From positions 50,357,406 through 50,397,747 of the forward strand of contig NC_068991.1 in the NCBI RefSeq assembly GCF_001194135.2: a stretch of DNA of 40,342 nt, given 5' to 3'. The stretch is from Octopus bimaculoides. Taxonomy: Eukaryota. How positions within the stretch are numbered: the stretch's first letter is position 1; each line of letters opens with the position of its first letter. The notes under the pieces are model-generated. The model did not search any database. It was not told the origin of the DNA and saw nothing but the letters and a program-made list of their open reading frames with translations. Positions 10,063 through 36,633 of the stretch are shown here, in pieces. The position numbers and the translations under genes were made by a program.

Positions 10063-10509
10063 TATATATACGGTCATCCCATAAATAATGCAGTTTTTTA
10101 TACTTTTTTATCTTTCAGAATTAAGATAAACAAAATGCTTTTTTAATCTAAAATATACTCTCCTTCGTTTTCTATAATGCTCTACAATTTATCTGATAGA
10201 CTTGCAAGGCCCCTCTTCCATAATTCACTTGTCCGTGACGAAAAATACTCCTCCACTGCTATTCTAACCTCGTCTACAGAATTCATATTTTTTCCGTCCA
10301 AATGATTTTGAAGACTGTGGAATAAATGATAATCAGATGGGGCAATATCCGGCAAATATGGTGGGTGGAGCATTGTTTCCCATTCAAACTGTTCCAGCCT
10401 TTGGAATGTCATCCTCGTTGTATGTGGCCGAGCATTATCATGATGGAAGAACACCTTTCGTCTTGAAACCAAAAATAGTCGTTTTTGTTTGGTTTGAGTT
10501 TAAAAGTTC

Positions 10510-11140
10510 GGATCTTTTTTAAAACGGGGGCCACATTTTTCATTAACGAAACACTTTGAAACTTGGAACACTGGTAGAATGTGTCATATAAAACATCTTT
10601 TTCTCTTAGTCTTCTTTAAAAAAAAAGAAATCCATAAGTTATTCCATGTTAAAGTTGTCGTATTTCTGTNNNNNNNNNNNNNNNNNNNNNNNNNNNNNNN
10701 NNNNNNNNNNNNNNNNNNNNNNNNNNNNNNNNNNNNNNNNNNNNNNNNNNNNNNNNNNNNNNNNNNNNNNNNNNNNNNNNNNNNNNNNNNNNNNNNNNNN
10801 CTGAAACAATTAACCCTAACCCTAACCCTAGGGTTAGGGTTAGGGTTAAAGCAAATTTAAAATGAAAAAAGCAAATAAAACGAAGGTATGGAGATTAAAT
10901 ACGCTTTACATCGCTTAATCAGCCAAAGGAGTAAATGTAAACAACTGAATACTTGTCAGTGATTGGTTGAAATTATCGAAATAAGACAATTTTTTTACAT
11001 GAAATAAATTCGAATACAAAAATATTTTTCTGTTCTATAACACAAAATAGATAAGTATACGAAGTTTGAAAGTCTTTCCGTACCAAAAACACTACGTAAA
11101 ACATTAATGAAAAATGTGGCCCCCGTTTTAAAATAGATCC
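10510..11140. mobile_element. MITE of the same GGATC family, nested inside a mariner
   Basis: 37-bp TIR GGATCT(T/A)TTTTAAAACGGGGGCCACATTTTTCATTAA with 1 mismatch; perfect 8-bp TSD AAAAGTTC (10502-10509 and 11141-11148). Confidence 0.92.
10810..10849. repeat. Perfect 40-bp palindrome of telomeric repeats (CCCTAA)3/(TTAGGG)3
   Basis: TTAACCCTAACCCTAACCCTAGGGTTAGGGTTAGGGTTAA equals its own reverse complement. Confidence 0.95.
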
Positions 11141-12103: not shown

Positions 12104-13200
12104 TTGTGTTTTTTGCTGCTCATCCCCCCGCACGGGATGGAGGCAGAGATGCCTAATGCAGGCATAGAGAAAAGCAAAAGCTACACAGCAGTAGCTGGAG
12201 GAATGAATTTAACAAATGAAACGAAGTTCAAATTAAGAGAGGTAATTATCCCTATTGATAAACTAAGAAAATGCAAGAAGTATGCCGAAAAGGAGGGGGG
12301 CAAAGTAAAGCTGACCCCTCCTGAAGGTTTTTTAGCAGAAGTGGAAAAAAAATTGTTATATACAGGTCCTTCAACCTGAAGGAAAGGAAAATAGAAGTGG
12401 CGAAGGAAGAGAACATCGAAAGGTGCCTTTAGTGTATTAAGGAAAAGGTGACTTTTTATGCACTTGGAAGGAAATTCGGCACAGTGGAGGTGAGATTTGC
12501 CTGCACAGAAGAAGGAGTAAAGAAATCCACTGTACCTATAGGAAACGAGGAATGGCTGCTCCTGCCAACTTACCTAGGTAAAAGAATATCTAGGGTAAGA
12601 GTTGGCAAGATTCCTCCTGAGATGAAAGAAGAATGGATAACAACAGCTGTCCTATCCAGTACCAAAGAAGAACCCAGCATTGTGTCAGCAACAAGAATGC
12701 AGAAGCTACACTGATGGGGATACGGGCTTGAGTTATTAGTCAAGATAACTCAAGCTGATATGAACAAGATACCAGAGATAATTGAACTCCCAGACAAGAA
12801 GAAACTAAACGTTACAGTGGAGGGGAAACCCCTCACTTGCTATGGATGTGGCCAGAAGGGGCACATCAAAAAGAAGTGCTCCCAAAGCACAATTGAACCA
12901 AGAAAGGAGGAAGAAATCCCGTCAGAGCATGAGGATGCAGCAGAAACAGAAGAGAAAAGCAGAGTAGATCCAACTGACACCAAGGAAGAGTACACACAAG
13001 TTATTAGAAAAAGAGATAAGGGTGACTTGTCCCCTAAAGCTTCCAAAAAGAAGAAGCAAAATAACCAAAGAATAGCAGCAACATATCATAGCAAACAACG
13101 ACAGAAGAAAACAATAATAAAGAGACTTCCAGCAAGCAGTCAAAGGAAGAAGAGCGGACCATGAAATGGAAGGAAGAACATTTTATATTGTATAAAACAA
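12104..13200 (+). mobile_element. Degenerate gag-like ORF1 of a non-LTR retrotransposon with CCHC zinc knuckle
   Basis: Three consecutive broken ORFs; CYGCGQKGHIKKKC (C-x2-C-x4-H-x4-C); purine-rich plus strand; no downstream ORF2. Confidence 0.65.
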
Positions 13201-16774: not shown

Positions 16775-16940
16775 CAACAAGGTTACTTGGAACTAAGTCT
16801 GGTTTATATAGAACTATGACTATGGCAGCCACAGATTACCAATACGAAAACTTGAAAATCACTAAACCAAGTGAGTGGGTATTCCATGTAGAATTTAACC
16901 GACCTGACAAAAGAAATGCCATCAATCGAGCTTTATCAGA
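16775..16940 (+). CDS. ECH1: ECH1 coding exon (first firmly identified): [54 protein letters not shown]
   Basis: Long poly-T tract plus ACAG acceptor (AG 16773-16774); GTAAGT donor at 16941; in-frame ATGs at 16816 and 16822; crotonase N-terminal NRPxKRNA motif. Confidence 0.93.
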
Positions 16941-19900
16941 GTAAGTTTACTAATTTTGTATTGATTTAACTTACTATTTAATGTTCCAGTTGTTTAGAAT
17001 TAAAGTGAAGCTTTGCAACCTTGAAATCACGAATGCTGGTTAAAGTGATTGAGACCTTTGGCAATATACAAGGCTTGAGAAGACCTGTCAAGCCAAGTGA
17101 GATTGTAGTCGTAAAAGTACCCACTACACTCTTGGAGTGGTTGGTGTTAGGTAGATTATCCAGCTGTAGGAATCATGCCAAATCAGAATGAAGCCTGGTG
17201 CAGCTCCTCAGCTTACCAGTTTTCAGTCAAGCCATCCGACCCATGTCAGCATGGAAATCGGACATTAACTGATGATGATGAGGCAACATCTTTTATGGTG
17301 GAGTAGTTCATTTACATCATCGTCATCATCATCATCATTCAACATCCATTTTCCATGCTGGCATGGGTCGGACGATTTGACTGAAGCTGTTGAGGCCAAG
17401 GATTGCACCAGGCTCCATTGTCTGTTCTGGCATGGTTTCTATGGCTGGATGCTTTTGACATGGTACCAGCACCAATATCAACTTTGTTGTGGCAGATGGG
17501 TCTCCTTGAACACAGCAATTGTACCAGATATCTCACTCCTTAGTCATCTGCTATTAAATGTCTGTGTATGTTGAGTTTAATAAAGTATTAACTGTTGGGT
17601 ATTAAATCAGTGTTAATATGTTTAATGTAGTGAAGCAACAAGTTTTAATTTGTTAAAATTACACATACAATAAAGAGAAGAAATAATTAGTTAAATGATT
17701 AATTAATTCAAGTCAAAGAAGGTAGTGAAGGCAAACCCCAAATTTAAATGTAATAAAATAAATTAAAAACAGAATATGGACATGCAAGTTGGAGAGTAAG
17801 TTGTTTTCTCTTCGGTAGTGTGGGGACAATTCTGGACATGTTTCAGTTTTATTAGACCTTATCAGTAAAGTCTAGTCATAGCAATTATTGCTAGATCTTA
17901 AGATGACAAAAAGATATATAGAAGAATCTTAGTGAATGTACACTATTTGTCAAGCATCACATAAATCAGGGGTCTCCAATTTTAATGCACGAGTCAATAC
18001 ATCAACATACAAAGACCTATGTTGTATCTCCAAAACTAGATCTATCAGGGTAAAAACTAATAGTATATATTAGAATCAACATCTCAAATCTACTCAAGAA
18101 TTGATCTAAAGAATCCTGTAAAACCAGAATCTGTACATTTGCCAAGGTGAAGATGACAGAATTATCTCCCTTAAACTTATTGGTGGAAATATTAAACGAA
18201 ACTATAGAAACTTTGACTCATCTTCTTGCCACCAGGATGTTAACTCTCTGTATTCTAAGCTAACTGTCATCCAATTTTCACAGTGATAAAGATACAACCC
18301 CCACAAGATATGATAAAAAATTTTACTGATGCAATTTGTCACTTTCAGAGTTACATACAGAAAAAATTTGTGAGTTTGCATAAAAAAGACATACTAACGT
18401 TTTGAGATGGACTTTTCATGAGAGAGAAAAATATTTTTTTTTACTCTAAGATGAAGGGCCATTCTGGATGAGATATATCAGAAATGTTTAACAATGAGGG
18501 ATCCTTTCTGTTAAATATTTCCCTGCAAACTTTATCTTATATCTAAAACTAGGGATATGGAAGCCGTTAAACACTTCTACTTGATTTTAACTCCCAACCT
18601 GTGAATGAGCTACTAAATCAATATTTTTATTAATTATGCCATATTACCTTTGTGTTATGGGATAGTAATGCTTAACACAAAAACTGTCAAAGGTAGGAAA
18701 TATGCAGGGTTTGTTTGAATAAGCTAGAGGGTTGACAGGTAGGAGATAGATGAAGCTGCCTTCAAGGAACTGAAACAGAAAAACTGATTAAACACTGTAA
18801 AATAGATGAAGCTAATTGGCAATTATATTCCAATTTTGGGTGAGTGGAGAAAATATTGCTGGAAACGTTTGACTTTTATCACAGAGACGAACAAATATTT
18901 GTTGATTTCTAATGAGATGATGGAGAATTGAACATACAAAAATATACATAGGCGCAGGAGTGGCTATGTGGTAAGTAGCTTGCTTACCAACCACATGGTT
19001 CTGGGTTCAGTCCCACTGCGTGGCACCTTGGGCAAGTGTCTTCTACTATAGCCTCGGGCCGACCAAAGCCTTGTGAGTGGATTTGGTAGACGGAAACTGA
19101 AAGAAGTCTGTCGTATATATATATGTTTGTGTGTCTGTGTTTGTCCCCCCCCCCAACTTTGCTTGACAACCGATGCGGGTGTGTTCACGTCCCTGTAACT
19201 TAGCAGTTCGGCAAAAAGAGACCGATAGAATAAGTACTAGGCTCGACTAAAGGTGGTGCCCCAGCTTGGCCACGGTCAAATGACTGAAACAAGTAAAAGA
19301 GTAAGAGTATATTAGGTATAAATATTGTTACAATTATTTAGCTAAATTCAATTAAAGATAATTTTTCTTACTAATATAATGAACAAAGAAAATACTAAAC
19401 GTATACATATATATATTTATATATTTCTCTTGTAGAGATATTGTTTCTTCCTTCAAAAAGCTTTCCTATGATCCAGACTGCCGTGTTGTGGTTCTTAGCG
19501 GAGCAGGACGAACATTTACTTCAGGTTTGTTCATACTGGACTTATCAGTATTTTTAAAAATATTTTATCAGTATTAATGCCAGACCTTGTAGTAAACTGC
19601 CATGTTCATTGACCAAGAAATGATATTTCACCAGCACTACTAACATAAGACATAAACATCACAGACTCTCTTTCTCTTAGAAAATTTATGATAGTAAATT
19701 TATGATTTACTATCATAAACACAGGTGAGATCTTTCAAAATTTGACTCAAGCCCCTCACACCTGTTTCTCAAATGTTTTTCAGTTTTTATTTTATTCATT
19801 AGAGAACAGTTCTGATGATAGGTTTTGTTTTCCGTCAAACAACTATATGTATATTACTGTGGGAAAAACAAGAATCTAGCAAACACTTTTTTTTCTTGAC

Positions 19901-20331
19901 CATAACAAATCTCAATCATTAACACTTAATATGAAATCTTTTTTTTATTTTTCTTTAACTTTAAATAGATGTTTCATATCACTTCCATTACTAACAACTT
20001 CAAGAAAAGAAGTTTATTTCCAATTATTCAAATGTGAGGTTAGTCATGTGACCTGTTGTGTGTGAAATGCAATAAATAGAAACTGCTTAGTATTCTGCTG
20101 AATAGACAGTCTTGTCACATTTTGCCATGCTGATTCAAGAATTACATCAACCATTAATATGTAAAATTCTCTGCCACTTTCAATGAGGAAACCATTCTAT
20201 TGAGTAAACAAGTGGAAGATTTATCATCAAAATCAATGGCTGATCCATTTACACACATAGGATTGGTAATATATGTATGTACATACATACATACATGTGT
20301 GTGTATGCATGCATATCTACACATACACATA

Positions 20332-20376
<45 letters not shown>

Positions 20377-20681
20377 NNNNNNNNNNNNNNNNNNNNNNNN
20401 NNNNNNNNNNNNNNNNNNNNNNNNNNNNNNNNNNNNNNNNNNNNNNNNNNNNNNNNNNNNNNNNNNNNNNNNNNNNNNNNNNNNNNNNNNNNNNNNNNNN
20501 NNNNNNNNNNNNNNNNNNNNNNNNNNNNNNNNNNNNNNNNNNNNNNNNNNNNNNNNNNNNNNNNNNNNNNNNNNNNNNNNNNNNNNNNNNNNNNNNNNNN
20601 NNNGTGTCTTCTACTATAGCCTCGGGTCAACCAAAGCCTTGTGAGTGGATTTGGTAGATGAAAACTGAAAGAAGCCCGTCG

Positions 20682-20712
<31 letters not shown>

Positions 20713-22454
20713 ATATGTTTGCGTGTCTGTGTTTGTCCCCCCAACATCGCTTGACAACCGATGGTGGTGTGTTTACATCCCCGTAACTTAGCAGTTCGGC
20801 AAAAGACACCGATAGAATAAGTACTAGGCTTACAAAGAATAAGTCCTAGGGTCGATTTGCTCAACTAAAGGCAGTGCTCCAGCATGGTCGCAGTCAAATG
20901 ACTGAAACAAGTAAAAGAGTATATATATATGTATGGATGGATGGATATGCACACACACACACACACACATATCTTTCATTTTCATTCCTGTTTTTCCTTG
21001 CCACCATAGGTTAGTTGAATGTATTTCTGAAGCATTGTTTTTTACAGCCAGATTCTCTTCCCATCATTAACCCTTTTTCTGTTACAAATAAGGGAATCTC
21101 TTCCTTCACTCTTTTTCAAGGGTTACATAGTGAAGGTATGATTCCTTGACAACAGAAATTACAACAGCATCACCAGTTTCAGCTTGCAATATTCAGAGAA
21201 TCTGTAAACAAACACACTGATACATATACATTTACATACATATATTTATTTGCTTGTGTTAAGCAGCAGAAGAGTTAAGAGTGATCTTACTGATCGTGTA
21301 AAGCACTCATGGCGATGCCATATGAAAATGCCCATGTGGTGACATGTAAAAGCACCCATGCAGCATCGCGCAAAAGCGTCCATGCAGTGCCACATAAAAG
21401 CACCCATGCAGTGCTGCATAAAAGCATCCAGTACACTCTGTAAAGTGGTTGGTGTTAGGAAGGGCATCCAGCCATAGTAACCCTACCAAATCAGACGAGT
21501 CTGGTGCAGCCCACTGGCTTGTCAGCTCTGGTCACACCATCCAATCCATGATAGCATGGACAACAGATGTTAAATGATGATGTTAATGATGATGTGTGTG
21601 TGTGTATACTCTCATCCCTTTGATGAATGACAGTTCCTGACACAGGTGTAAAAAATGACCTTCACCCAATAGCTGCATGTGTGTATGATCAAACTGAAGA
21701 CTTCCAGTAGCACCCTCTAGCTGTTCCTGTTGCCACTGGATTTATGTGATGGTGTTGGCACCAATGTCTTGGCTTGCTGAACAATTTACATAACGAATAT
21801 TATTATTATTATTATTATTATTGAGTGAGAGAGCAGTGCATGCCATCAAAGTGACACTGGGGTAAAATATACAAAGCCCAATACACCCATCATGTCTACC
21901 CGTCTGATAAGGGTACACCAGGCACATGCATCACAACCATATGTGCGCGACATAGTGATCTCATATCAAGATAAATAGCACATGACCTTGCAGGTGGGGC
22001 CCAGTTAGAATTTTCTTCAGATCGAGTAGCCCATCCTGCTCAAAAGGTCCCTGAATAAGGTTTGTTTAAGGATGTTGAGCAAAACACNNNNNNNNNNNNN
22101 NNNNNNNNNNNNNNNNNNNNNNNNNNNNNNNNNNNNNNNNNNNNNNNNNNNNNNNNNNNNNNNNNNNNNNNNNNNNNNNNNNNNNNNNNNNNNNNNNNNN
22201 NNNNNNNNNNNNNNNNNNNNNNNNNNNNNNNNNNNNNNNNNNNNNNNNNNNNNNNNNNNNNNNNNNNNNNNNNNNNNNNNNNNNNNNNNNNNNNNNNNNN
22301 NNNNNNNNNNNNNNNNNNNNNNNNNNNNTCTGTGGTATTTAGCAGAATATTTGCTGTAGCCCATCTTTTTATACCAAGACAAAACAACGTACATGATAAC
22401 ACTTCCAATCAATTAAGATCAGAAACCATGAGAGCCACTGCCTGGTACTGCATC

Positions 22455-22515
<61 letters not shown>

Positions 22516-25500
22516 GTAGGCATGGTTTATGCATAGCCAGTCTTATTGTCTCAGCCTTCAAATCTGTATTGGTCTGGTGCAACAAGCGTCACAAGCCCAG
22601 TAATTATCAAGATGCAGGGTTTGTATGGAGTTACCTTCTCTTAGATGAGCAATTAAAGAGCTGAAGGACCTCATCTGCTCTGGGTCTGTTGCAGTGTCTG
22701 AGGGACCTTCTTCAGGAAACAATTTTGTGACAAGCTAATTAACCTAACAGGTGCTACTACTCTGGGTTAGAGTAGACCTGGGAACAATAGGGGCTAAATA
22801 TTGGTTCCAAACTCCTCAAAACACTAGAACTTCCAAACCAAGACCCTATTTCAGGACACAAGGTGGGGAGGTGTGAATTTCATAGGAATGTGAGGGGAGA
22901 TGGTTAGATGAGAAAAAAAAAACAGATTTTACTTCAACTTCACAGTTGTTATACTTATCAGTGTAAAAGGCTTTAACAAATCAATAAACAATTACTCCAA
23001 CAACATCTGTTCTACCTATATGGAACAATACATGTAAAACATCATTCATAAAAAAGAGGTAAGGTAGTGTTTTCTTCTCTTAATCTTATTCAAAACTAAA
23101 GGTGGTGAGCTAGTAGAATTGTTAGCATGCTAGACAAAAAACCTTAATGGCTCTTTGTCTTTACATTCTGGGTTCAAGTCCTGACATGGTCAACTTTCCC
23201 TTTCACTCTTTCAGGGTCAGTAAAATATGTACCAGTCAAACACTATGGTTGGTGTAATTGATTCATCTCCTCCTGCAAAATTGCTAGTCTTGTGCCAAAA
23301 AATTTGATTTGAATCTTAATCAAAACTAAAAATCTTTTTTTCTAGAATATCTCTAAGATTCTTTATCTTAATATAATCTTCTATCTTCAGGAATTGATTT
23401 TGCCTCATTAGCTGAAGTTTACCAAGAGACTGATATCTCTAAGATTCTTTATCTTAATATAATCTTCTATCTTCAGGAATTGATTTTGCCTCATTAGCAG
23501 AAGTTCACCAAGAGACTGGAGATATGGAAGTATCAAGGAGGGCTTTTGCACTTCATAAAGCTATCAAAGATTTCCAAGAAACTTGCAGTTCATTTGAAAA
23601 GGTAAATCATTGTTTTGGAATCTTCAGTTTACTTAAAATGGTTACAAATAACAATCATGGCCAACTGTGAAGAATCACAGTTTGAGAGATGGGGTGGAAA
23701 AGTGAAAAGGCTAAATGGATATAGTTTAGGCTACTTATTTCATAGGCCTTCAGTTAAAATTCACTGCATTTAATCATTGTTAAGTGGCATCCATTTGTTG
23801 AATGGTCACAGCTGGTTACCTAAAGAATCTCTTGACTGAGATTTGCAGTTGCAGTTTGTACTGGTGCTGGTAGTGTATACAGTTCAAAACCCTGTGAACT
23901 GTGCAGTAATTTTATCAAAATTCACTGCTTGTTTATACATGACAAAGATAAACTATAAACTCTTGCTGTAGGTTCTTTGACTCTTCTTCTAATTGTTGCA
24001 GTTTTATCTTCTGCTATTTCTGCCTTGCTGCAGCCTTTTTTTTTTTTTTTTGTGGTGTGTGTTGTGGGGGGGGTTGTATTTCAAATTCATTCTACATATA
24101 TTCGACAGTCTACTCTGTAAGATCGTTGGTGTTAGGAAGGGCTTCCAGCCGTAAAACCCCTACCAAAACAGATAGTGAGGCCTGGTACAGTCTTTTGCCT
24201 AGCCAACCCTTGTCAAACTGTCCAACCCATGCCAGCATGGAAAACGGATGTTAAATGATGAGGATGAGGATGAGACAATAAATCATATTTCATTCTTTTG
24301 TGTGACACTATTATTATTTTGGTGGCCAGATCTAAATGTTATTTTATTAACAGATCGTCTCTGCTAACATTTTTCATTTGTTAATTTTCGGGGTTGTTCT
24401 GCTTACATTCATCAGCCTTTTTATTATCATCTCTAGGTCGTAAGACAGCGAGCTGACAGAATTGTTAGCATGCTGGATAAGAATGATAATCACCATTTCA
24501 TCTGTCTTTACATTCTGAGTTCAAATTTTACCAAGGTCAACTTAGCCTTTAATCCTTTCAGGGTCAATAAAATAAGCACCAGTTGAACACTGAGTTCAAT
24601 GAAATCAGCTTTCCCTGAAATTGCTGGCCTTGTGCTAAAATTTGAAATCACTATTACCTCTAAGTTGTACTTCATATCTCTTTTAATTATTGTATTATTT
24701 TATTGAGCTATATATATATATATATATATATATACGCGTGTGTGTGTATGAGAGAGAGAGAGAGATAAGAAACTTAAACTAATTAATGATTGATTGAGCT
24801 CATCTAATGCAAAAATAGAAAAATATCTGATTGAAATATGAATTAAATACTTTCTACTTCTTCAGTGTCTTAAACCTGTAATCTCAGCTGTCCATGGCGC
24901 CTGTATTGGATTTGGTGTGGATCTAATAACAGCCTGTGACATGAGGTATTGTACCAAAGATGCATGGTTCCAAGTAAAAGTAAGTTACTTCTTTACAAAT
25001 ACTTAAATGTTGCTTTGATAATTGTAAGTAATCACCTTGTTAACAGTGACTAGCTACCTTGTTAATAGTGAGTAACCACCTTGCTGAGAGTGAGTGTGAC
25101 CCCCTTACTAATAGTGAGTAGTCATGTTGCTAATAGTGAGTGTAGCCACTTTGCTAAGAGTGAGTATCGGCACCTTGCTAATAGTGAGTATAGGCACCTT
25201 GCTAATAGTGAGTAGCCACCTTGTTAATGATGAGTAATCACCTTGCTAAGAGTGAGTGTAGCCACCTTGCTAAGAGTGAGTGTAGCCACCTTGCTAATAG
25301 TGAGTATAGGTACCTTCTTATAGTGAGTATAGGCACCTTGTTAATAGTGAGTAGCCACCTTGCTATGAGTGAGTAGCTACCTTACTAAGATCTGAGCTCA
25401 AGAACTATACGGCAGCAGCAGAATTCTATAAGGGAGAAAACAGGTTGGAGTTAGATTTGCCACTTGTTGGTGTAATATGTTATTGGAAGAGAGGAGCTAA

Positions 25501-28500
25501 TCATTGTGGATATTTCTCAAAATATGGCTGAAACTTCATTATTCAACTCTTTATATTTAGGCTTTCAAGGCATATTTTATTTCATGCAACTCTTTTTAAT
25601 ACATGTGCATATATACAATGATTACTACTACTATCACCACCACCACCACCATCATCATGTTTGAATATACTCTGAGATTTCTGTGCATTTATTTCCTTCA
25701 GGAAGTAGACTTTGGTCTTGCAGCTGATGTTGGTACTTTACAACGTTTACCAAGAATTATTGGCAATCAGAGCCTTGTTAGAGAACTGGCTTACACAGCA
25801 AGGTCTATAACTTCAGATGAAGCACATGATGCTGGACTTGTGAGGTTTGCATAAAGTTTTATCCCTTCATATCATGTTGTACTTGTTTTTTTTTTTCTTC
25901 CGCCTTATTTCCATAAGTATTTGATTACTGAAGGAATGCCAACCTTTCCCTTACTTCCTGACACTTGTTTTTTACCAGATCATGAGACATGTAGGCCCCT
26001 TTGAGTGATGTTCAAATGAACCTCATTACAGATGTATTACTGCATGTGTGAGAGAAAGTGTGTACAGTTGAAAGAATATGTTGAGGTATTTGTTGTTATC
26101 AGCCCTGATTAAACTGACATCTAGTTATTTCCATCCCGTCTCTTTAGGGGTATGTAGGGCTACAGTATCTAATGAACCTTAATTCTGTCATTTAAAGCAG
26201 GGGTTTTCAAACTTTTTGACTTGCGGACCCCTTTATATTTCAGGCTTTACCTTAGGGACCCCCTTATAAACGCTTATGAAATTTATACATAAATATTTGC
26301 TTAAAATAACATATATTTTTACATTTATTTATTTAACAGTATTTAACAACTAGGTTTATTGTCAATTAAAAGATTTCGATTAAAAAACATATATAAAATC
26401 AAATTGCCCGTAAAATGTATTTGCTGTCTACGGACCCCCTGTCTTGTCTTTGCGGACCCCCTGTGGTCGCGGACCACAGTTTGGAAACCCCTGATTTAAA
26501 GGAAAGCCTCTTGATTGAGAGCAGAAATTGACAGCTGAGAAACTGTTACAAAATTGCCATTTGTCTCTCGTTATATTTGTTGCTTCATCATCATCATCAT
26601 CATTTGACATCTGTTGTCCATACTGGCATGGATTAGACGGTTTGACTAGGGCTGGTAAGCTGAGGGGCTGCACCAGACTTCAGTCTGATTTCTATGGCTG
26701 GATGCCCTTCCTAATGCTAACCACTCCAAGAGTGTAATGGGTGCTTTTACGTGCCAGCTGCATGACACCAGTATCTGCCACTACTATGATTTCACTTGGC
26801 TTGATGGGTCTTCATCTCAAGCACAGTAGATCGCTAAGGGTCTCAATCATTTGTCATTGCCTCTATAAAGCCCAATGTTCAAAGGGTGCTTTTTATGTGC
26901 CACCAGCATGGGTGCTTGTTACGCAACACCGGCATCAGTCACATAACCTCCATAAGCCCAATTCTCAAATGGTGCTTTTTATGTGCCACCAACACAGGTA
27001 CCAGTTACGTGACACCAGCATTAGCCACACTGCCTCTGTGGGGCCCAACACTCAAATGGTGCTTTTTACATGCCACTAGCATGGGTGCCAGTTACACAAC
27101 ACTGGCATCAGCTTTGATTATGATTTCACTTGGTTTGATGGGTCCTCTCAAGCACAGCATATCACCAAAGGTCTCAGTCACTAGTTATTGCCTCCATGAA
27201 GCCCAACGTTTGAAGATCATGCTTCACCACTTCATCCCATGTCTTACTGGGTCTACCTCTACCACAGGTGCCCTCCACAATTAAAAATCAGCACTACTTT
27301 ACACAGTTGTCCTCGTCCCTACACATCACATGACTCTACCAGCGCAGTCATCTCTCTTGCACACCACATCTGATACTTATTATGTCCAACTCTTCTCTCA
27401 AGACGCTTACACTCAGTTGTACATGCACACTGACATTGCACATCCAGCAAAGCATACTAACTTCGTTTCTTTCAAGCCTATGCATGTCCTCAGCAGTCAC
27501 AGCCCATGTTTCACTGCTGTGTAGCATAGCTGTTTGCACACAGGCATCATACAGTCTGCCTTTCATGCTGAGGGAGATGCCTTTTGTTGCCAACAGAGGT
27601 AGGAGCTCTCTGAACTTTGTCCAGCCTATTCTTATTCTCACAGTTACGCCCTCGGAGCATCCACTTCCGCTACTGACTTGGTTACCTAAATAACAGAAGC
27701 TATCAACTACATCTAGCTTACCCCCACCCCGGACAGTCGATGGAGTCTATTTTCTGTACATTTTTAGTGTTTATTGTACCTGTACACATGTGAAGGCGCA
27801 TGGCTCAGTGGTTAGTGTCGAGCTTATGATCGTGAGATTGTGAGTTCGAACCCCGGACCGGGCTGCGTGTTGTGTTCTTGAGCAAGACATTTTATTTCAC
27901 GTTGCTCCAGTTCACTCAGCTGTAGAAATGAGTTGCGACATCACTGGTACCAAGCTGTATCAGCCTTTGCCTTTCCCTTGGATAACACTGGTGGCATGTA
28001 GAGGGGAGGCCGGTATGCATGGGCGACTACTGGTCTTCCATAAACAACCTTGCCCGGACTTGTGCCTTGGAGGGTAACTTTCTAGGTGCAGTCCCATGGT
28101 CAGTCATGATCAAAGGCGGTCTCAGCAAACACCTTCCACACACAAAAGCTATTTTCCAAGTTAATCTTCTTCTGATATTGCTTGCTTGTATATGGATAAT
28201 TATTCTTCAAATTGTAATAATGAAACTGTAAAAATGAGAGCTTGTTCATAAGTAAAACACTCAACTAATTCACAATCAACTCATTAATGTGAAAGGATTG
28301 CCATTATATTAACTACTACTATAACTTTTACTATAAAGCACCTGTGCTGGTACCACGTAAAAATTACCCAGTACACTCTAAAGTAGTTGGTGTTAGGAAG
28401 GGTATCCAACCATAGAAATCATGCCAAAATGGACAATTGGAGCCTGGTACAGCTTGCCAGCTCCTGTCAAACTGTCCAACCCATGCCAGCTTGGAAAATG

Positions 28501-31133
28501 GACATTAAATGATGATGATGTCTATTGATAAAGAAGAATATTTTATATATGTTTTTCTTGAAATCATTAAAAAATGTTAAGAAAAATGAACTTCCCTCCA
28601 ATTCAAAGATGAACAGCAACCAGGACATTTACAAATTAGTTGCTACTGTCGTTGCTATCTCTGCAATTTTCCATTTCTTTACTGAGATAAATTTATTTAA
28701 TGGAGTTAATTGCTTTTGTAATTTGAAGTCTCACTTAATTAGGTATGAGACTAACATTTTACCATTAGCTAAATAAGCTTACAAAATGTAGGATTACATG
28801 TCTTGTTCGGAAATATATTAAAATATGTCAGATCTATGTATTCGTTCAAATGATTCACTTGTTTTAACAATGTCATTACAAAATTATGGTGTGCTATCAA
28901 CCAATGAAATCTATCATCATCGTTTAACATCCGCTTTCCATTCTAGTATGGGTTGGACGATTTGACTGAGGACTGGTGAACCAGATGACTACACCAGGCT
29001 CCAATCTGATTTGGCAGAATTTCTACAGCTGGATGCTCTTCCTAACGCCAACCACTCTGAGAGTATATTGGGTGCTTTTACATGCCACCGGCACGAAGGC
29101 CAGTCACACAGTACTAGCAACGGCCTCAGGCGGTACTGGCAACGGCCATGCTCAAAATGGGTATTTTACGTACCACCTGCACAGGAGCCAGTCCAGCAGC
29201 ACTGGCAATGACCTCGCTCGAAAGTCTTTTCACGTGCCACCAGCACAAGTGCCAGTAAGGCGACGCTGGCTACGATCATGCTCAAATGGTGCTATTTACA
29301 TGCCACTGGCACAGAGGCCAGACAGCTGCTCTGGCAACGATCACACTCAGACGGTACTCTTAGTGCTCCACTGGTACAGGTGCTATCACGATTTCACTTT
29401 CATTTGCCCCAACAGGTCTTCGCAAGCGGAGTTTAGTGTCCAATGAAGGAGAGGTTGGCATGGGTGCCAGTCGCCGAATTTGGTTCAATTTCGATTTCAC
29501 TTGCCTCAACAGGTCTTTGCAAGCGGAGTTTAGTGTCCAATGAAAGAAAGGTACTCCTAAGTGGCCTGGTTACAGCCCTAGCATAGGCCATGGGTTATGG
29601 TCTCACTTGGCTTGCCGGGTCTTCTCAAGCACAGCATATTTCCAAAGGTCTTGATCACAAGTCATTGCCTCGGTGAGGCCTAATGTTCAAAGGTCGTACT
29701 TCACCACCTCATCCCAGGTCTTCCTGGGTCTACCTCTTCCATAGGTTCCCTCAACCGCTAGGATGTGGCACTTTTTCACACAACTATTCTCATCCATTCT
29801 TGCCACATAACCATACCAGCGCAATCGTCTCTCTTGCACACCACAACTGATGCTTCTTAGATTCAACTTTTCTCTCAGGGCACTTACACTCTGTCGAGTA
29901 TGCACAGTGACATTACTCATCCATCAGAGCATACTGGCTTCATTCCTTGTGAGCTTACGCATGTCCTCAGCAGTCACGGCCCATGTTTCACTGCCATGTA
30001 GCATGGCTGTTCATACACATGCATCATACAGTCTGCCTTTTGCTCTGAGTGAGAGACCCTTTGTCACCAGCAGAGGTAAGAGCTCTCTGAACTTTGCCCA
30101 GGCTATTCTCATTCTAGCAGCTACACTTTCAGTGTACCCTCCCCCACTACTAACTAGATAACGGAAGCTATCAACTATGTCTAGTTTTTCTCCCTGGAAT
30201 GTGGCAGAAGTTGTTTTCTGCACATTTTCAGTGTTTATTACTTCAGCACATCTGTCAGATGCAAAAACTAACTTCCTAGTTAGCCTTCCTTTGATATTGC
30301 TGCACCTCTTATGTGTCCATAGCTTACACTGGGTACATCTTATAGAGTTTCTACCTACGTCTTTTCTACAGATCGAGCTGGTCCATCTACCTGAAAGGGT
30401 TTGTGTTTTGTCTACCTTCCTACTTATTAGGACTTTGGTTTTAGCTAGGTTGACTCTAAGGCCCTTCGATTCTTGTTCTTGCTTCCACACCTGAAACTTC
30501 TCCTCTAGTTCTGATAGTGACTCAGCAATTAGTGCAAGGTCATCAACATAGAGGAGCTCCCAGGGGCATCCTGTCTTGAATTCCTGTGTTATTGCCTGAA
30601 GGACTATGATAAATAGGAGGGCGCTGAGGACTGAACCTTGGTGGATCCCTACCCAGAATTCTTCACTGTACTCATTGTCAACTCTCACCTTACTGACAGT
30701 GTCTCTGTACATGGCTCGCACAGCTCTCACTAACCATTCTTCTATCCCTAGTCTCCTCATTGACCACCAGATAAGGGATTGGGGGACCCTGTCAAAAGCT
30801 TTCTCCATGTCAATGAAAGCCAGGTACAGAGGTTTATCTTTGGCTGATTACTCATTGAAAAGTTGTTTCTGTTTCATTTTGTTTGTTTTGATATGTTACC
30901 TTGGTAAAACCTTTTATAAATTAAATGCATTAAAAGATTTAATTACAAAATTACTTCAATTTTATGCAGCCGTGTTTTTGATGACAAAGAACAACTGATG
31001 AAAGCTGTCCTTGATACTGCGTCAGTCATAGCCAGGAAAAGCCCAGTTGCCATCCAAACTACAAAGAAGAATTTACTGTATTCCCAAGACCATTCAGTCC
31101 AAGATGGTTTGGATAACATTGTAAGTCTATTTT

Positions 31134-31168
<35 letters not shown>

Positions 31169-32826
31169 CAGGGTGTTCAATTTAAAAGTTGACTCGATTG
31201 ATTGACTGTCAAAATATTGGCTCTCTGTGACTGGCTTGCTATGTCAAATTGATTTTAGCCATTTTACATGTGTAACGCATTCATTCAAGATTTCTTCTAG
31301 AGTCATAATGGTGTTATCAGTGCAGCAACGTTCATTTATTGTGGAATCTTATTTTAGATAAGGTCTTTTTTTCAATGTTGCTCAAGAACACAACACTTTA
31401 CCTCATCCGGAAATCAAAACCCTAACCACAGGCCTTGACATTTAATTACTTCAGGAATTATTTTGGTCATTAATCAAGCTATAGTAGAGATGTTATATTC
31501 AGTAGTTTGGCCATGCAGTGTGACATGATATGTCTCTTTTCTCTGATATCTCAAAAATATAGATATCTGCTTTCCATCTCTTGTAGACTAGTTATAAATT
31601 TCTGTATAGTGATACATACTGGTACATACAAAGTTCTGTACAATGGCACAACATAAGAAAATGTGTTGTACATCATATCAAAATAAATTTCTTGAGGTCA
31701 AGATAAACAGCAGGAGCACTGTGTCATTTAAAGTATACTTGTTAGCATGCACTGATGAATTCAAGTTCATTTAAGGGTCTGGAAACTGTATTGGAAGCCC
31801 AGTCCAGTTATAAGAAATCATGATTATAGAATTAACGACAATATCACTTATTTACAGAATGACTGACCATAAGTAATATTGCTCTTGATATTAAACCTTT
31901 AGCATTTAAACCAACCATATCTACCCATTTTATGTTCAAACTGGCCATATTCAGCTTATCAAACGTACCCTACATTCTAATAATAACAATCACATCCTTG
32001 AAACCTCAAAGCTACAAGGTAATGCATGATTAACTAAAAATTATGAATAAATAGGCATTACATTTAACAGAGTAATCTGAATGCTAAAGGGTTAATCATT
32101 TTATTGTATTTGAGTTGAGGACAGTTGGTGTTTTGGGGGAAAGCTGAGATGATATTAAACAGAAGACAGAGACAAAATAGTCAGAACTGAATTACTATGT
32201 CAAAGTGAAATGCCCTCTTTACATTTAAATCTTAACAATTTCTCTTGCTATGTAATGATCAAAGATTTATGGAAAGTTGTTACTCATAATATCACAGTTT
32301 TATTACACTTAGAACAAAGATGAACTAAAAAAAAAATCATCTCCATTTTCTTTCTGCAGCATTTTACTAGTTTGTCTAAACATGCATTCATAATTTCATG
32401 CAGTTGAACAGAAATTACGCCTTGTTTTTCTTAAAGTTCATACATGTGACATGGGAAGGGAGGGAGTGAATACAGTCTGTGACATAGTTTCAGTTTTTAG
32501 TTACACCATGGTTATTGTCAGTAATTTGAATGAATGTGTGCTCCACCCAGCTGGATTGTCACGCTTCATGAAGATAGAAGCAATCAAGTATACAAGTTTA
32601 GGTTGGGCAACAATTTCAGTTTGGAAATTTTGATTGTGATCTCTGATAGAGTATACACAGGTAAATTTATAATTTGAAATAGACTTGTTAAAACTCCTCC
32701 TAAAATCGACAGCATTTAATGGCAAATTATATTTTCTTTCAGGCTGCTTTAAATCAAGTAATGTTGCAGAGTGAAGACCTTATGAAATCAATAGCAGAAA
32801 AGTCACCAATCTTCTCAAAACTGTAG
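16775..32826 (+). CDS. ECH1: ECH1 spliced CDS, 5'-partial: join(16775..16940,19436..19524,23477..23601,24866..24979,25702..25844,30970..31120,32743..32826); delta(3,5),delta(2,4)-dienoyl-CoA isomerase
   Basis: Manual splicing gives one uninterrupted frame with all GT-AG introns and matching phases. Motifs: [88 protein letters not shown], and C-terminal FSKL*. These align colinearly with recalled human ECH1. From ATG 16816 the CDS is 831 nt (276 aa plus stop). Confidence 0.96.
17050..17282 (+). mobile_element. RTE 3' fragment, sense orientation
   Basis: GAGACCTTTGG...GAGAAGACC...GCCAAGTGA (ORF2 end) joined to GGTTGGTGTTAGG...CATGGAAATCGGACATTAACTGATGATGATG. Confidence 0.75.
17315..17480 (-). 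mobile_element. RTE 3'-tail fragment, antisense, tail-to-tail with the previous copy
   Basis: (CAT)n then CAACATCCATTTTCCATGCTGGCATGGGTCGGACG. Confidence 0.8.
18950..19307 (+). mobile_element. Full-length tRNA-derived SINE (octopus OK/OR-like family, from recall)
   Basis: A-box TGGCTATGTGGTA (18961), B-box GGGTTCAGTCCC (about 19003), CORE-like CCTTGGGCAAGTGTCTT, internal (TA)/(TG) tract, and (GTAAAAGA)n tail. Confidence 0.85.
19436..19524 (+). CDS. ECH1: ECH1 exon: (E)[29 protein letters not shown](G)
   Basis: TTTCTCTTGTAG acceptor; GTTTGT donor at 19525; 89 nt, phase 2 in and phase 1 out. Confidence 0.95.
20604..20920 (+). mobile_element. SINE of the same family as 18950; 5' end lies in the assembly gap
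   Basis: GTGTCTTCTACTATAGCCTCGGG...GTGAGTGGATTTGGTAGA...GACTGAAACAAGTAAAAGAG. Confidence 0.85.
21300..21592 (+). mobile_element. RTE 3'-tail fragment with about 22-bp internal repeats
   Basis: Repeated AAAAGCACCCATGCAG units, then GTGGTTGGTGTTAGGAAGGGCATCCAGCC...GATGTTAAATGATGATG. Confidence 0.78.
21800..22455. mobile_element. Unclassified interspersed repeat flanked by (ATT)n tracts and spanning a gap
   Basis: Non-coding block between two (TAT)n microsatellites; the retroposon call is from recall of similar cephalopod repeats only. Confidence 0.35.
22455..22514. repeat. (TAT)n microsatellite
   Basis: Direct reading. Confidence 0.95.
23100..23308 (+). mobile_element. Nin-domain SINE copy, CpG-decayed
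   Basis: GGTGGTGAGCTAGTAGAATTGTTAGC head and CCCTTTCACTCTTTCAGGGTCAGTAAAATATGTACCAG core. Confidence 0.75.
23347..23518 (+). repeat. Direct tandem duplication, 2 x 86 bp, spanning an ECH1 intron/exon junction
   Basis: Copies 23347-23432 and 23433-23518 differ at 2 positions (GCT/GCA and TAC/CAC). Confidence 0.97.
23477..23601 (+). CDS. ECH1: ECH1 exon: (G)[41 protein letters not shown]
   Basis: CTATCTTCAG acceptor (second copy of a duplicated junction); GTAAAT donor at 23602; 125 nt keeps the frame. Confidence 0.9.
24125..24273 (+). mobile_element. RTE 3'-tail fragment
   Basis: GTTGGTGTTAGGAAGGGCTTCCAGCC...CCAACCCATGCCAGCATGGAAAACGGATGTTAAATGATGAG. Confidence 0.8.
24444..24648 (+). mobile_element. 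Nin-domain SINE copy, CpG-decayed
   Basis: GACAGCGAGCTGACAGAATTGTTAGC head and GCCTTTAATCCTTTCAGGGTCAATAAAATAAGCACCAG core. Confidence 0.75.
24866..24979 (+). CDS. ECH1: ECH1 exon: [38 protein letters not shown]
   Basis: TTCTACTTCTTCAG acceptor; GTAAGT donor at 24980; 114 nt; crotonase oxyanion-hole region and the Asp equivalent to ECH1 D176. Confidence 0.96.
25024..25390 (+). repeat. Minisatellite, about 16 units of 22-24 bp (AGTGAGT[GT/AT]AGCCACCTTGCTAA[T/G])
   Basis: Units counted directly; 22-bp and 24-bp variants are interspersed. Confidence 0.92.
25702..25844 (+). CDS. ECH1: ECH1 exon: [47 protein letters not shown](S)
   Basis: TTTCCTTCAG acceptor; GTTTGC donor at 25845; carries the Glu and Asp equivalent to catalytic E196 and D204; visible within ORF-track entry 25603..25854. 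Confidence 0.97.
26198..26493. mobile_element. hAT (Charlie-like) MITE, 296 bp
   Basis: 16-bp TIR CAGGGGTTT(T/C)CAAACT; perfect 8-bp TSD ATTTAAAG (26190-26197 and 26494-26501); repeated subterminal GCGGACCCC motifs. Confidence 0.92.
26585..27780 (-). mobile_element. 5'-truncated RTE LINE: ORF2 C-terminus plus 3' UTR
   Basis: [16 protein letters not shown]...[17 protein letters not shown] (27348-27641); same 3' UTR and (GAT)n tail as the element at 28914. Confidence 0.9.
27792..28123 (+). mobile_element. tRNA-derived SINE with V/CORE-like domain
   Basis: A-box TGGCTCAGTGGTT (27801), B-box GAGTTCGAACCC (27842), then GTGTTCTTGAGCAAGACATTTTA. Confidence 0.8.
28337..28520 (+). mobile_element. 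RTE 3'-tail fragment
   Basis: GTTGGTGTTAGGAAGGGTATCCAACC...GGACATTAAATGATGATGATG. Confidence 0.8.
28914..30845 (-). mobile_element. 5'-truncated RTE-clade LINE: RT domain to 3' tail
   Basis: [44 protein letters not shown], CxxC region, [21 protein letters not shown]; 3' UTR ending in (GAT)n at 28914; antisense within an ECH1 intron. Confidence 0.95.
30970..31120 (+). CDS. ECH1: ECH1 exon: (S)[50 protein letters not shown]
   Basis: TTTTATGCAG acceptor; GTAAGT donor at 31121; 151 nt. Confidence 0.95.
31135..31168. repeat. (GTA)n microsatellite 14 nt after an ECH1 donor site
   Basis: Direct reading. Confidence 0.95.
32743..32826 (+). CDS. ECH1: ECH1 terminal coding exon: [27 protein letters not shown]; ends in PTS1 (SKL)
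   Basis: TTTTCTTTCAG acceptor; TAG at 32824-32826; the SKL terminus matches known ECH1 proteins. Confidence 0.95.
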   Translation, partial: AALNQVMLQSEDLMKSIAEKSPIFSKL

Positions 32827-35884: not shown

Positions 35885-36340
35885 GGGTCGCACATGCAGG
35901 ACATTTTATAGGAGCAAATTATGGAACACCATTGAAAGGATTAAGAAGAAAATAGGGAAGACCAACTGGCATACCGCTTTAGAAGGGCCCTGGATAAACT
36001 TAAGCTAAGAATTAAGGTTGTTGAAAGGCCAGGCAACCCTATCAAATCCCTTATCGGTAGAACCTACCCTTTTAATAGAACCCCCTGTACTGATAGGAAC
36101 TGTACTGTATGTAGATTTAGTCCACTAACAAACTGTAAAGTCAGAAATGTGGTCTATAGTATAAGATGTACAGATGGACGATGCAGTAACAAGACAACGA
36201 CGTACATAGGCGAAACAGCGCGGAGCATAGGAGAGCGGATAAATGAACATTGGAGGGAACTTAAGGAAGAGAAGAGCTCATCAGTTCTGTACCAGTACGT
36301 TGAGCAGAAACACAGAGGCTCACTCAACAACATACAAAGA
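35885..36340 (+). mobile_element. Penelope-like element fragment: linker plus GIY-YIG endonuclease (Neptune-like)
   Basis: Open frame from about 35944: KVVERPG...CTDRNCTVC...NCKVRNVVYSIRC...C...YIGETARSIGERINEH; truncated by a SINE at 36341. Confidence 0.85.
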
Positions 36341-36633
36341 CTTGTGAGTGGATTTGGTAGACGGAAACTGAAAGAAGCCCGTCGTATATGTAGATATGTA
36401 TATGTGTATGTGTGTGTATATGCTTGTGCGTCTGTTTGTCCCCCCAGCATCGCTTGACAACCTATGCTGGTGTGTTTATGTCCCCGTAACTTAGCGGCTC
36501 GGCAAAAGTAGCTGATAGAATAAGTACTAGGCTTACAAAGAATAAGTCCTGGGGTCAATTTGCTTGACTAAAGGTGGTGCTCCAGCATGGCCACAGTCAA
36601 ATGACTAAAACAAGTAAAAGAGTAAAAGAGTAA
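36341..36633 (+). mobile_element. 5'-truncated SINE of the same family as 18950, abutting the Penelope-like fragment
   Basis: CTTGTGAGTGGATTTGGTAGACGGAAACTG...GTAAAAGAGTAAAAGAG. Confidence 0.85.

What the first reader, a model, noticed from the sequence alone, without database searches (positions are those of the whole stretch)
23347..23601. 86-bp tandem duplication creates a twin 3' splice site that would frameshift ECH1
Seen: 44 nt of intron end plus 42 nt of exon start are duplicated, so two acceptors (AG ending at 23390 and 23476) have identical upstream context. The downstream one gives intact ECH1. The upstream one adds 86 nt and reads [35 protein letters not shown] with a stop at 23495-23497, far upstream of later junctions. 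The copies differ at 2 sites, both in the exonic part (silent Ala; Tyr/His). Established: such premature stops usually trigger NMD. Inference: this is either a real poison acceptor that tunes ECH1 dose, a hypomorphic allele, or two haplotypes mis-joined in tandem by the assembler.
Basis: partly seen in the sequence, partly recalled or inferred. Interest (0 to 1): 0.7.

Follow-up and report, generated by a model that had tools for sequence, protein, structure and literature searches.

The report
Duplicated splice acceptor in octopus ECH1
In the California two-spot octopus genome assembly, an 86-base stretch spanning an intron-exon boundary of the fatty-acid enzyme gene ECH1 is present twice in a row, giving two identical splice acceptors of which only the second makes a working protein; it is probably a real, species-specific and harmless-to-mildly-harmful duplication, but an assembly error cannot be excluded without the raw reads.

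Summary
Window 23347-23432 and 23433-23518 are a head-to-tail 86-nt duplication (84/86 identical) made of 44 nt of intron end plus 42 nt of exon start. It lies at exon 3 of Octopus bimaculoides ECH1 (window = GCA_001194135.2, chromosome CM046611.1).

The downstream acceptor (exon starts 23477) gives exactly RefSeq XP_014776935.1. The upstream one (23391) adds 86 nt and stops at TAG 23495-23497.

New evidence:
- O. vulgaris, O. sinensis and Argonauta hians each have one copy, so the duplication is specific to the O. bimaculoides lineage.
- Each copy carries one derived substitution relative to the outgroups.
- The contig sequence comes from the 2015 short-read shotgun assembly, which was never polished.
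- No gap adjoins the copies.
- The 2.3% difference between copies is about 30 times the reported 0.08% heterozygosity.
- The geometry does not fit a haplotype bubble.

I could get no read-level or RNA-level evidence.

Verdict: a genuine lineage-specific tandem duplication that creates a decoy acceptor (about 0.6). Assembly artefact is about 0.3. An adaptively maintained "poison acceptor" is about 0.05. This is a known kind of event and of modest interest.

The parts
23347..23432 (+). Copy 1 of the 86-nt unit: 44 nt of intron end (branch-point region, pyrimidine tract, AG) plus 42 nt copied from the exon 3 start. Carries GCT (derived) and TAC (ancestral).
   Evidence: polarity from the alignment with O. 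sinensis and O. vulgaris
23433..23518 (+). Copy 2 of the 86-nt unit: the 44 nt are the end of the functional intron and the 42 nt are the true start of exon 3. Carries GCA (ancestral) and CAC (derived, His in the annotated protein).
23389..23390 (+). Upstream (decoy) acceptor AG. An exon starting at 23391 adds 86 nt and shifts the frame.
23475..23476 (+). Downstream (productive) acceptor AG. An exon starting at 23477 gives the annotated protein.
   Evidence: model identical to P0122 = XP_014776935.1
23495..23497 (+). TAG premature stop reached when the upstream acceptor is used. It lies 104 nt before the exon 3 donor, with four more exon junctions downstream.
23477..23601 (+). ECH1 coding exon 3 (125 nt), with donor GTAAAT after 23601.
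19436..19524 (+). ECH1 coding exon 2. Its donor after 19524 is the partner of both acceptors. The intron is 3.87 or 3.95 kb and contains two N gaps (20377-20603, 22088-22328).
16816..32826 (+). ECH1 coding region, isoform X2 model. Exons: 16816-16940, 19436-19524, 23477-23601, 24866-24979, 25702-25844, 30970-31120, 32743-32826 (stop included; the protein ends in SKL).
   Evidence: translation identical to P0122; ECH_1 domain and dienoyl-CoA isomerase structures

Best explanation
This is a genuine 86-bp head-to-tail duplication. It arose in the Octopus bimaculoides lineage after the split from the O. vulgaris/O. sinensis lineage, and it spans the intron 2 / exon 3 boundary of ECH1 (delta3,5-delta2,4-dienoyl-CoA isomerase).

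What the sequence shows: the duplication placed a second complete 3' splice-site module (branch-point region, pyrimidine tract, AG and 42 nt of exon) 86 nt upstream of the original one. The downstream acceptor (exon start 23477) makes the intact enzyme and is the one in the annotated mRNAs. Any splicing to the upstream acceptor (23391) inserts 86 nt, shifts the frame and stops after 21 aberrant codings' worth of codons (21 codons). That leaves a 105-aa fragment with only about a quarter of the crotonase fold.

What is inferred: such transcripts are unproductive and probably degraded. The upstream copy acts as a decoy that is tolerated, either neutral or mildly hypomorphic, rather than as a selected regulator. 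Exon definition (pairing of the donor at 23602 with the nearest upstream acceptor) probably favours the productive site. Whether the duplication is fixed or polymorphic is unknown.
For: (1) The repeat is exact in register, with sharp ends and no N between or beside the copies. The nearest gap ends at 23328-1000, that is at 22328, about 1 kb away.

(2) O. sinensis (L003), O. vulgaris (L001) and Argonauta hians (L004) each have a single copy. The O. vulgaris assembly used ONT long reads.

(3) Against the outgroups, each copy carries one private derived change: GCT in copy 1 and CAC in copy 2. This pattern is not what sequencing error at a read end would give.

(4) The copies differ by 2/86 = 2.3%. 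The reported genome-wide heterozygosity is 0.08% (PMC6289776). Local O. bimaculoides versus O. vulgaris/sinensis substitution divergence is 5-7% for a split of about 34 My. That puts the duplication at very roughly 13 My (Poisson range about 1.6 to over 34 My). This is an inference.

(5) The variant sites lie at unit positions 67 and 74, that is 66 nt from one end and 12 nt from the other. Two bubble contigs laid end to end would be symmetric around them.

(6) Meraculous closes gaps only with read-supported splints or k-mer walks, and its authors report collapse, not expansion, of tandem repeats (PMC3158087). That the octopus was assembled with Meraculous is my recollection and was not verified here.

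(7) Near-perfect two-copy tandem duplications of 47-184 bp also occur in the orthologous 30-45 kb of the sister-species assemblies. The base rate of real events of this kind is therefore about one per window.

(8) The only AG dinucleotides in the 90 nt before each acceptor are at unit positions 9-10 and at the acceptor itself. By the first-AG rule the branch point must lie inside the duplicated 44 nt, so each copy is a self-contained acceptor. This is an inference.

(9) The gene model using the downstream acceptor equals XP_014776935.1. The truncated product covers only ECH_1 profile positions 6-69 of 251.
Against: No read-level, long-read or RNA evidence from O. bimaculoides could be obtained. 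The only assembly available is the window itself. Its contigs are the unpolished 2015 short-read shotgun assembly. The same group reports split-haplotype redundancy as a common artefact in their squid assembly.

Two variants 7 nt apart, each with one derived state, are equally what two alleles would look like.

A perfectly intact decoy acceptor in a conserved gene is somewhat unexpected if it has persisted for millions of years and is used often.

There is no microhomology at the junction to suggest a slippage mechanism.
Confidence: 0.6

Rival explanations
1. Assembly artefact. The animal has one copy and is heterozygous at two nearby sites (GCT..TAC and GCA..CAC). The short-read assembler or gap closer laid the end of one haplotype contig and the start of the other in tandem. 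There is then only one acceptor and nothing biological to explain beyond a Tyr/His polymorphism.
For: The contig sequence is the 2015 Illumina shotgun assembly, explicitly not improved in version 2. The window has 8 N gaps in 40 kb. An odd duplication and hairpin sits right at another gap edge, 37399-37658. Exactly 2.0 copies with SNP-like differences, each allele carrying one derived state, is what two haplotypes look like. Split-haplotype redundancy is acknowledged by the same group for another cephalopod assembly. All relatives have a single copy.
Against: No N run lies between or next to the copies, and unclosed small gaps in this assembly are written as 10 or more Ns. None of the 8 gaps shows duplicated flanks, apart from simple repeats. 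The variant sites are off-centre in the unit (66/12), unlike concatenated bubble contigs. The junction has zero overlap, so it is not a mis-patched overlap. Two heterozygous sites within 8 bp are rare at 0.08% heterozygosity: about 0.4% of 86-bp windows under a two-allele coalescent, by my calculation. Meraculous, if it was used, needs read support for every closure.
Confidence: 0.3
2. Adaptive poison acceptor. The duplication is real, the upstream acceptor is used at a substantial and possibly regulated rate, and selection keeps it to set ECH1 dose through nonsense-mediated decay.
For: The decoy module is fully intact: 44/44 intronic bases, and identical for 22 nt into the exon. This holds despite about 2% divergence elsewhere in the unit. 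The stop lies more than 50 nt upstream of an exon junction.
Against: There is no conservation: it is absent from three other octopods. With only two substitutions in total, an intact 66-nt stretch is not significant (about 5% by chance, and noticed post hoc). ECH1 is an auxiliary beta-oxidation enzyme with no known need for splicing-based dosage control (general knowledge). No RNA evidence exists, and no aberrant product was found in the protein collection.
Confidence: 0.05
3. Recent polymorphic duplication formed by unequal exchange between two diverged alleles. It is real but young, the two differences are inherited allelic SNPs, and it is carried by the sequenced male as a possibly hypomorphic allele.
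For: This explains SNP-like differences without needing millions of years of retention of a decoy acceptor. Each copy has one derived state.
Against: It needs both a rare SNP cluster (heterozygosity 0.08%) and a rare rearrangement at the same spot. There is no microhomology at the breakpoints.
Confidence: 0.05

Closest known systems
Germline tandem duplications spanning an intron-exon boundary in human disease genes, e.g. the BRCA1 intron 9 / exon 10 partial duplication (PMC11839443)
   Same: A head-to-tail duplication carries the end of an intron plus the start of the next exon, so the acceptor is present twice. Use of the upstream acceptor keeps the duplicated segment in the mRNA and gives a premature stop.
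   Different: The BRCA1 event is 2012 bp, new, and pathogenic in a patient. Here the unit is 86 bp, the copies have already diverged at two sites, the gene is still annotated as producing a normal protein, and use of the upstream site is untested.
Alternative 3' splice sites coupled to nonsense-mediated decay (unproductive splicing, poison exons or sites), and tandem acceptors such as NAGNAG
   Same: Two competing acceptors share one donor. One choice is productive and the other introduces a premature stop more than 50 nt before an exon junction.
   Different: Regulated poison sites are typically conserved across species, often ultraconserved. This one is lineage-specific. NAGNAG sites are 3 nt apart and keep the frame, whereas here the spacing is 86 nt and each site has its own branch-point region.
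False tandem duplications in short-read diploid assemblies (haplotypes assembled separately and placed side by side)
   Same: A short-read scaffold assembly, exactly two copies, and SNP-like differences.
   Different: Such artefacts usually flank gaps or contig ends. Here there is no gap, the variants are off-centre in the unit, and the divergence is about 30 times the reported heterozygosity.
ECH1 / dienoyl-CoA isomerase (human 2VRE and 8SK6, rat 1DCI)
   Same: The host gene is an orthologue: phmmer E = 1.7e-95 to 2VRE, an ECH_1 domain, and a C-terminal SKL.
   Different: Nothing unusual in the protein. The residue that differs between the copies (His/Tyr) is at a variable position: Tyr in O. 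vulgaris and O. sinensis, Asn in Argonauta.

Membership tests
ECH1 (delta3,5-delta2,4-dienoyl-CoA isomerase, crotonase superfamily) | Crotonase-fold (ECH_1) domain over most of the protein | tested here: met
   PF00378 E = 1.8e-43, residues 46-288
ECH1 (delta3,5-delta2,4-dienoyl-CoA isomerase, crotonase superfamily) | Closest relatives and solved structures are dienoyl-CoA isomerases rather than other enoyl-CoA hydratases | tested here: met
   Top hits are named ECH1 across animals. PDB 2VRE, 8SK6 and 1DCI score E about 1e-95, against 1e-41 for the next hydratase. The model is identical to XP_014776935.1.
ECH1 (delta3,5-delta2,4-dienoyl-CoA isomerase, crotonase superfamily) | Dual targeting signals (N-terminal presequence, C-terminal peroxisomal SKL) | tested here: met
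   The protein ends in SKL. Isoform X1 has an N-terminal extension, [24 protein letters not shown]. Actual targeting was not tested.
Alternative 3' splice site coupled to nonsense-mediated decay | Two acceptors with complete signals competing for one donor | tested here: met
   Identical sequence from -44 to +22. The pattern of AG dinucleotides places the branch point inside the unit. This is a sequence-level inference only.
Alternative 3' splice site coupled to nonsense-mediated decay | Premature stop more than 50-55 nt upstream of a downstream exon junction | tested here: met
   TAG at 23495-23497, exon end at 23601, and four more junctions downstream
Alternative 3' splice site coupled to nonsense-mediated decay | The alternative site is actually used, and its transcripts rise when decay is blocked | not testable with these tools
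   No O. bimaculoides transcript data could be reached. The protein collection holds no aberrant product and no transcript fragments.
Alternative 3' splice site coupled to nonsense-mediated decay | Conservation of the unproductive site across related species (expected for regulated cases) | tested here: not met
   Single copy in O. vulgaris, O. sinensis and Argonauta hians
False tandem duplication from haplotype mis-assembly | Sequence derives from an unpolished short-read diploid assembly | tested here: met
   Window = GCA_001194135.2. Version 2 reused the 2015 shotgun contigs unchanged.
False tandem duplication from haplotype mis-assembly | Copies abut a gap or contig end | tested here: not met
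   No N within about 1 kb. Closed-gap positions are not recorded in the sequence (all upper case), so a closed gap cannot be excluded.
False tandem duplication from haplotype mis-assembly | Difference between copies matches allelic diversity | tested here: inconclusive
   2.3% against a genome mean of 0.08%. This is unlikely for a random site, but artefacts would arise preferentially at SNP clusters.
False tandem duplication from haplotype mis-assembly | No junction-spanning reads, halved depth, and a single copy in independent data from the same species | not testable with these tools
   Reads and other O. bimaculoides assemblies are not available here.
Genuine lineage-specific tandem duplication | Head-to-tail copies with sharp ends, absent from outgroups, each copy with private substitutions | tested here: met

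The most novel reading that the evidence does not exclude
The duplication is real and fixed, has been retained for millions of years with its decoy acceptor fully intact, and diverts a substantial share of ECH1 pre-mRNA to decay. That would be a young, single-step origin of dosage control by unproductive splicing, in an animal group known for unusual RNA-level regulation.
Probability: 0.05. Interest if true: 0.55.

Novelty: new member of a known kind. Interest (0 to 1): 0.27.

Why it matters
If real, this is a clean natural experiment in splice-site choice. Two acceptor modules, identical over 66 nt and 86 nt apart, compete for one donor in a conserved gene, and one outcome is lethal to the transcript. 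Existing octopus RNA-seq could show which site wins and whether decay hides the loser.

It would also be an example of how unproductive splice sites can be born in a single mutational step.

If it is an artefact, it flags a class of small gap-free false duplications in the widely used O. bimaculoides reference. Such duplications can create phantom splice sites and a phantom Tyr/His difference in annotated proteins.

Either way the consequence for octopus biology is probably small, because ECH1 is an auxiliary beta-oxidation enzyme.

Tried and rejected
(1) I searched the 5.8-billion-protein collection with the exon 2 plus aberrant-tail peptide. One candidate came up and none was significant. 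A search with the normal exon 1-4 peptide gave only distant hydratases and no octopod transcript fragments. There is therefore no independent RNA evidence either way, and the negatives are uninformative.

Look-up of P0122 found nothing beyond the genome record.

(3) A scan of metagenome contigs for the variant-tolerant 25-mer gave no matches.

(4) I tested whether N gaps in the window carry duplicated flanks, which would show a systematic failure to merge overlaps. None does, apart from simple repeats. One 55-nt repeat starts exactly at a gap edge (37399), but it belongs to a hairpin-like structure.

(5) Rescue by a mini-exon: the only GT in the inserted 86 nt is GAA|GTTTAC at 23417. It is a weak donor and leaves the frame broken, so I rejected this.

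(6) Sequencing error as the source of the two differences: rejected as unlikely, because copy 1 has the ancestral base at one site and copy 2 at the other.

(7) Concatenated-bubble geometry: rejected, because the variants sit at 66/12 rather than centred.

(8) The Albertin 2015 genome paper could not be retrieved. The assembler name and k-mer size therefore rest on my memory and on indirect sources.

(9) Rfam found nothing in the window.

Full report
**1. What is in the sequence**

Window 23347-23518 is a perfect-register tandem duplication of an 86-nt unit. TRF gives period 86, 2.0 copies, 97% matches, no indels and score 330. The repeat finder gives copies 23347-23432 and 23433-23518.

The copies differ at two positions only:
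- 23413 T versus 23499 A
- 23420 T versus 23506 C

The bases flanking the array do not continue the repeat on either side, so the unit boundaries are fixed and there is no microhomology at the junction GAGACTG|ATATCTC.

Apart from microsatellites and old, diverged SINE-internal arrays, this is the only near-identical tandem duplication in the 40-kb window.

**2. The gene**

Stop-free stretches on the + strand assemble into a seven-exon coding model with canonical AG/GT borders:
- 16816-16940
- 19436-19524
- 23477-23601
- 24866-24979
- 25702-25844
- 30970-31120
- 32743-32826

Its 276-aa translation is identical to XP_014776935.1, Octopus bimaculoides ECH1 isoform X2 (P0122).

The window is identical over 29,130 nt to GCA_001194135.2 chromosome CM046611.1, positions 50,364,102-50,393,231.

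The protein has an ECH_1 domain (E = 1.8e-43). Its closest solved structures are human and rat dienoyl-CoA isomerase (2VRE, 8SK6, 1DCI; E about 1e-95). It ends in SKL.

**3. The twin acceptor**

The unit consists of the last 44 nt of intron 2 plus the first 42 nt of exon 3, so the acceptor AG occurs twice, ending at 23390 and at 23476.

- An exon starting at 23477 gives the annotated protein.
- An exon starting at 23391 adds 86 nt and reads …[35 protein letters not shown], then TAG at 23495-23497. That stop is 104 nt before the exon 3 donor.
- The resulting 105-aa product covers only positions 6-69 of the 251-position ECH_1 profile. By inference it cannot be an active enzyme.

The two acceptors have identical sequence from -44 to +22. 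Any position-weight scoring of the acceptor therefore gives them the same score.

In the 90 nt before each acceptor, the only other AGs are at unit positions 9-10 and, for copy 1, two bases before the unit. Under the established first-AG-after-the-branch-point rule, the branch point must lie inside the duplicated 44 nt. Candidates are CTCTAAG at about -36 and TTAAT at about -20. I infer that each copy is a self-sufficient 3' splice-site module.

The single GT inside the inserted segment (23417) is a poor donor and would not restore the frame, so no mini-exon rescue is available.

**4. Comparison with relatives**

Orthologous loci were fetched for three species:
- O. vulgaris (L001, GCA_951406725.2; ONT-based)
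- O. sinensis (L003, GCA_006345805.1)
- Argonauta hians (L004)

In O. vulgaris and O. sinensis, the two halves of the O. bimaculoides region align to overlapping coordinates that share one 86-nt stretch. This means a single copy. tblastn with the exon 3 peptide finds a second partial hit only in O. bimaculoides.

At the two variable sites the outgroups have GCA and TAC. Copy 1 is therefore derived at the first site (GCT) and ancestral at the second. Copy 2 is ancestral at the first site and derived at the second (CAC, the His of the annotated protein, where the relatives have Tyr).

Local substitution divergence between O. bimaculoides and the other two Octopus species is 5-7%, for a split of about 34 My. 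If the copies are paralogous, 2/86 = 2.3% implies an age of roughly 13 My, with a very wide Poisson range.

**5. Real or artefact?**

This is the crux, and it cannot be decided without reads.

Points for an artefact:
- The window has eight N gaps.
- The same authors describe split-haplotype redundancy as a common artefact in their squid assembly.
- Two SNP-like differences with one derived state each look like two alleles.

Points against an artefact:
- No N run lies between or near the copies, and small unclosed gaps in this assembly appear as 10 Ns.
- None of the gaps has duplicated flanks.
- The variants lie 66 nt from one end of the unit and 12 nt from the other. That is not the symmetric geometry of two bubble contigs laid end to end.
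- The junction has no overlap that a patching step could have mis-set.
- Reported heterozygosity is only 0.08% (PMC6289776). By my calculation, two heterozygous sites within one 86-nt window are expected in about 0.4% of such windows.
- The Meraculous algorithm closes gaps only with reads that contain both flanks or with a read-based k-mer walk. Its authors report collapse, not expansion, of tandem repeats (PMC3158087). I recall, but could not verify, that it was used for this genome.

On base rates: real two-copy tandem duplications of 47-184 bp at 95-96% identity occur in the orthologous 30-45 kb of the two sister assemblies. One real event per window is therefore unremarkable. What is unusual is only that this one straddles an acceptor.

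Weighing these points, I put a real duplication at about 0.6-0.65 (including a small share for a recent polymorphic origin) and an artefact at about 0.3.

**6. How it most likely works**

Shown:
- Two identical acceptor modules.
- The downstream one is productive.
- The upstream one gives a premature stop.

Inferred:
- Transcripts spliced at 23391 are non-functional and probably removed by nonsense-mediated decay. Note that the exon-junction rule is established for vertebrates and has not been tested in molluscs.
- With long flanking introns (3.9 kb and 1.3 kb), exon definition should pair the donor at 23602 with the nearest acceptor (23476). This favours the productive site.
- The decoy therefore costs some fraction of ECH1 output and is tolerated.

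A human precedent shows that the upstream acceptor can be used and the duplicated segment retained. This is the BRCA1 intron 9 / exon 10 tandem duplication (PMC11839443).

Absence from three other octopods argues against a conserved regulatory role.

**7. Comparison with known things and novelty**

Structurally this matches disease-type tandem duplications across an intron-exon boundary. Functionally it would be an alternative 3' splice site coupled to decay. It fails the conservation criterion expected of regulated poison sites, and actual usage is untested. It is at most a new member of a known kind, and there is a substantial chance it is not a real feature.

**8. What could not be done**

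- No O. bimaculoides reads, transcripts or second assembly were reachable.
- Two protein-collection searches aimed at transcript fragments returned nothing relevant.
- A metagenome scan was empty.
- The 2015 genome paper was not available.

The decisive tests are junction-spanning reads and depth, PCR across the site, and split-read counts for 19524^23391 against 19524^23477.

Noticed in passing
window 10808-10848 and 6424-6437: At 10808-10848 there is a telomere-like palindrome, TTAA-CCCTAACCCTAACCCTAGGGTTAGGGTTAGGG-TTAA, just right of an N gap. At 6424 a (GGTTAG)n run sits just right of a 10-N gap. Both are followed within about 60 nt by the same sequence, ATGGAGATTAAATACGCT. This suggests an interspersed element whose end carries TTAGGG repeats with TTAA flanks, as in piggyBac-like elements. 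There are 6 matches against 0.11 expected.
   Followed up: partly
window 37399-37658: The 55 nt starting exactly at the right edge of the 363-N gap (37399-37453) recur at 37604-37658 with one mismatch. The sequence between them is largely self-complementary. This is either a fold-back assembly artefact or a real inverted repeat next to a gap.
   Followed up: partly
window 30014-30847 (-): A reverse-transcriptase ORF fragment (RVT_1, E = 1.2e-19) lies inside ECH1 intron 5. It is an antisense retroelement insertion.
   Followed up: partly
window 35945-36454 (+): A 170-aa ORF has a weak GIY-YIG nuclease match (E = 0.001, below the Pfam cut-off). It may be a Penelope-like element remnant downstream of ECH1.
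   Followed up: partly
window 12715-13161 (+) and 10185-10499 (-): The first is a CCHC zinc-knuckle ORF, gag-like (E = 4.5e-4). The second is an ORF that by eye resembles the C-terminal part of a mariner transposase, but it has no Pfam hit.
   Followed up: partly
window 25015-25390; L001 29968-30700; L003 22348-23431: A 24/116-nt minisatellite in ECH1 intron 4 is conserved in position but varies greatly in length among the three Octopus species: about 0.37 kb, 0.73 kb and 1.08 kb.
   Followed up: no
window 23420 / 23506; protein residue 82 of isoform X2: [quoted passage not shown] The Tyr codon survives in the upstream copy. If the duplication is an artefact, this is a Tyr/His polymorphism in the sequenced animal.
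   Followed up: yes
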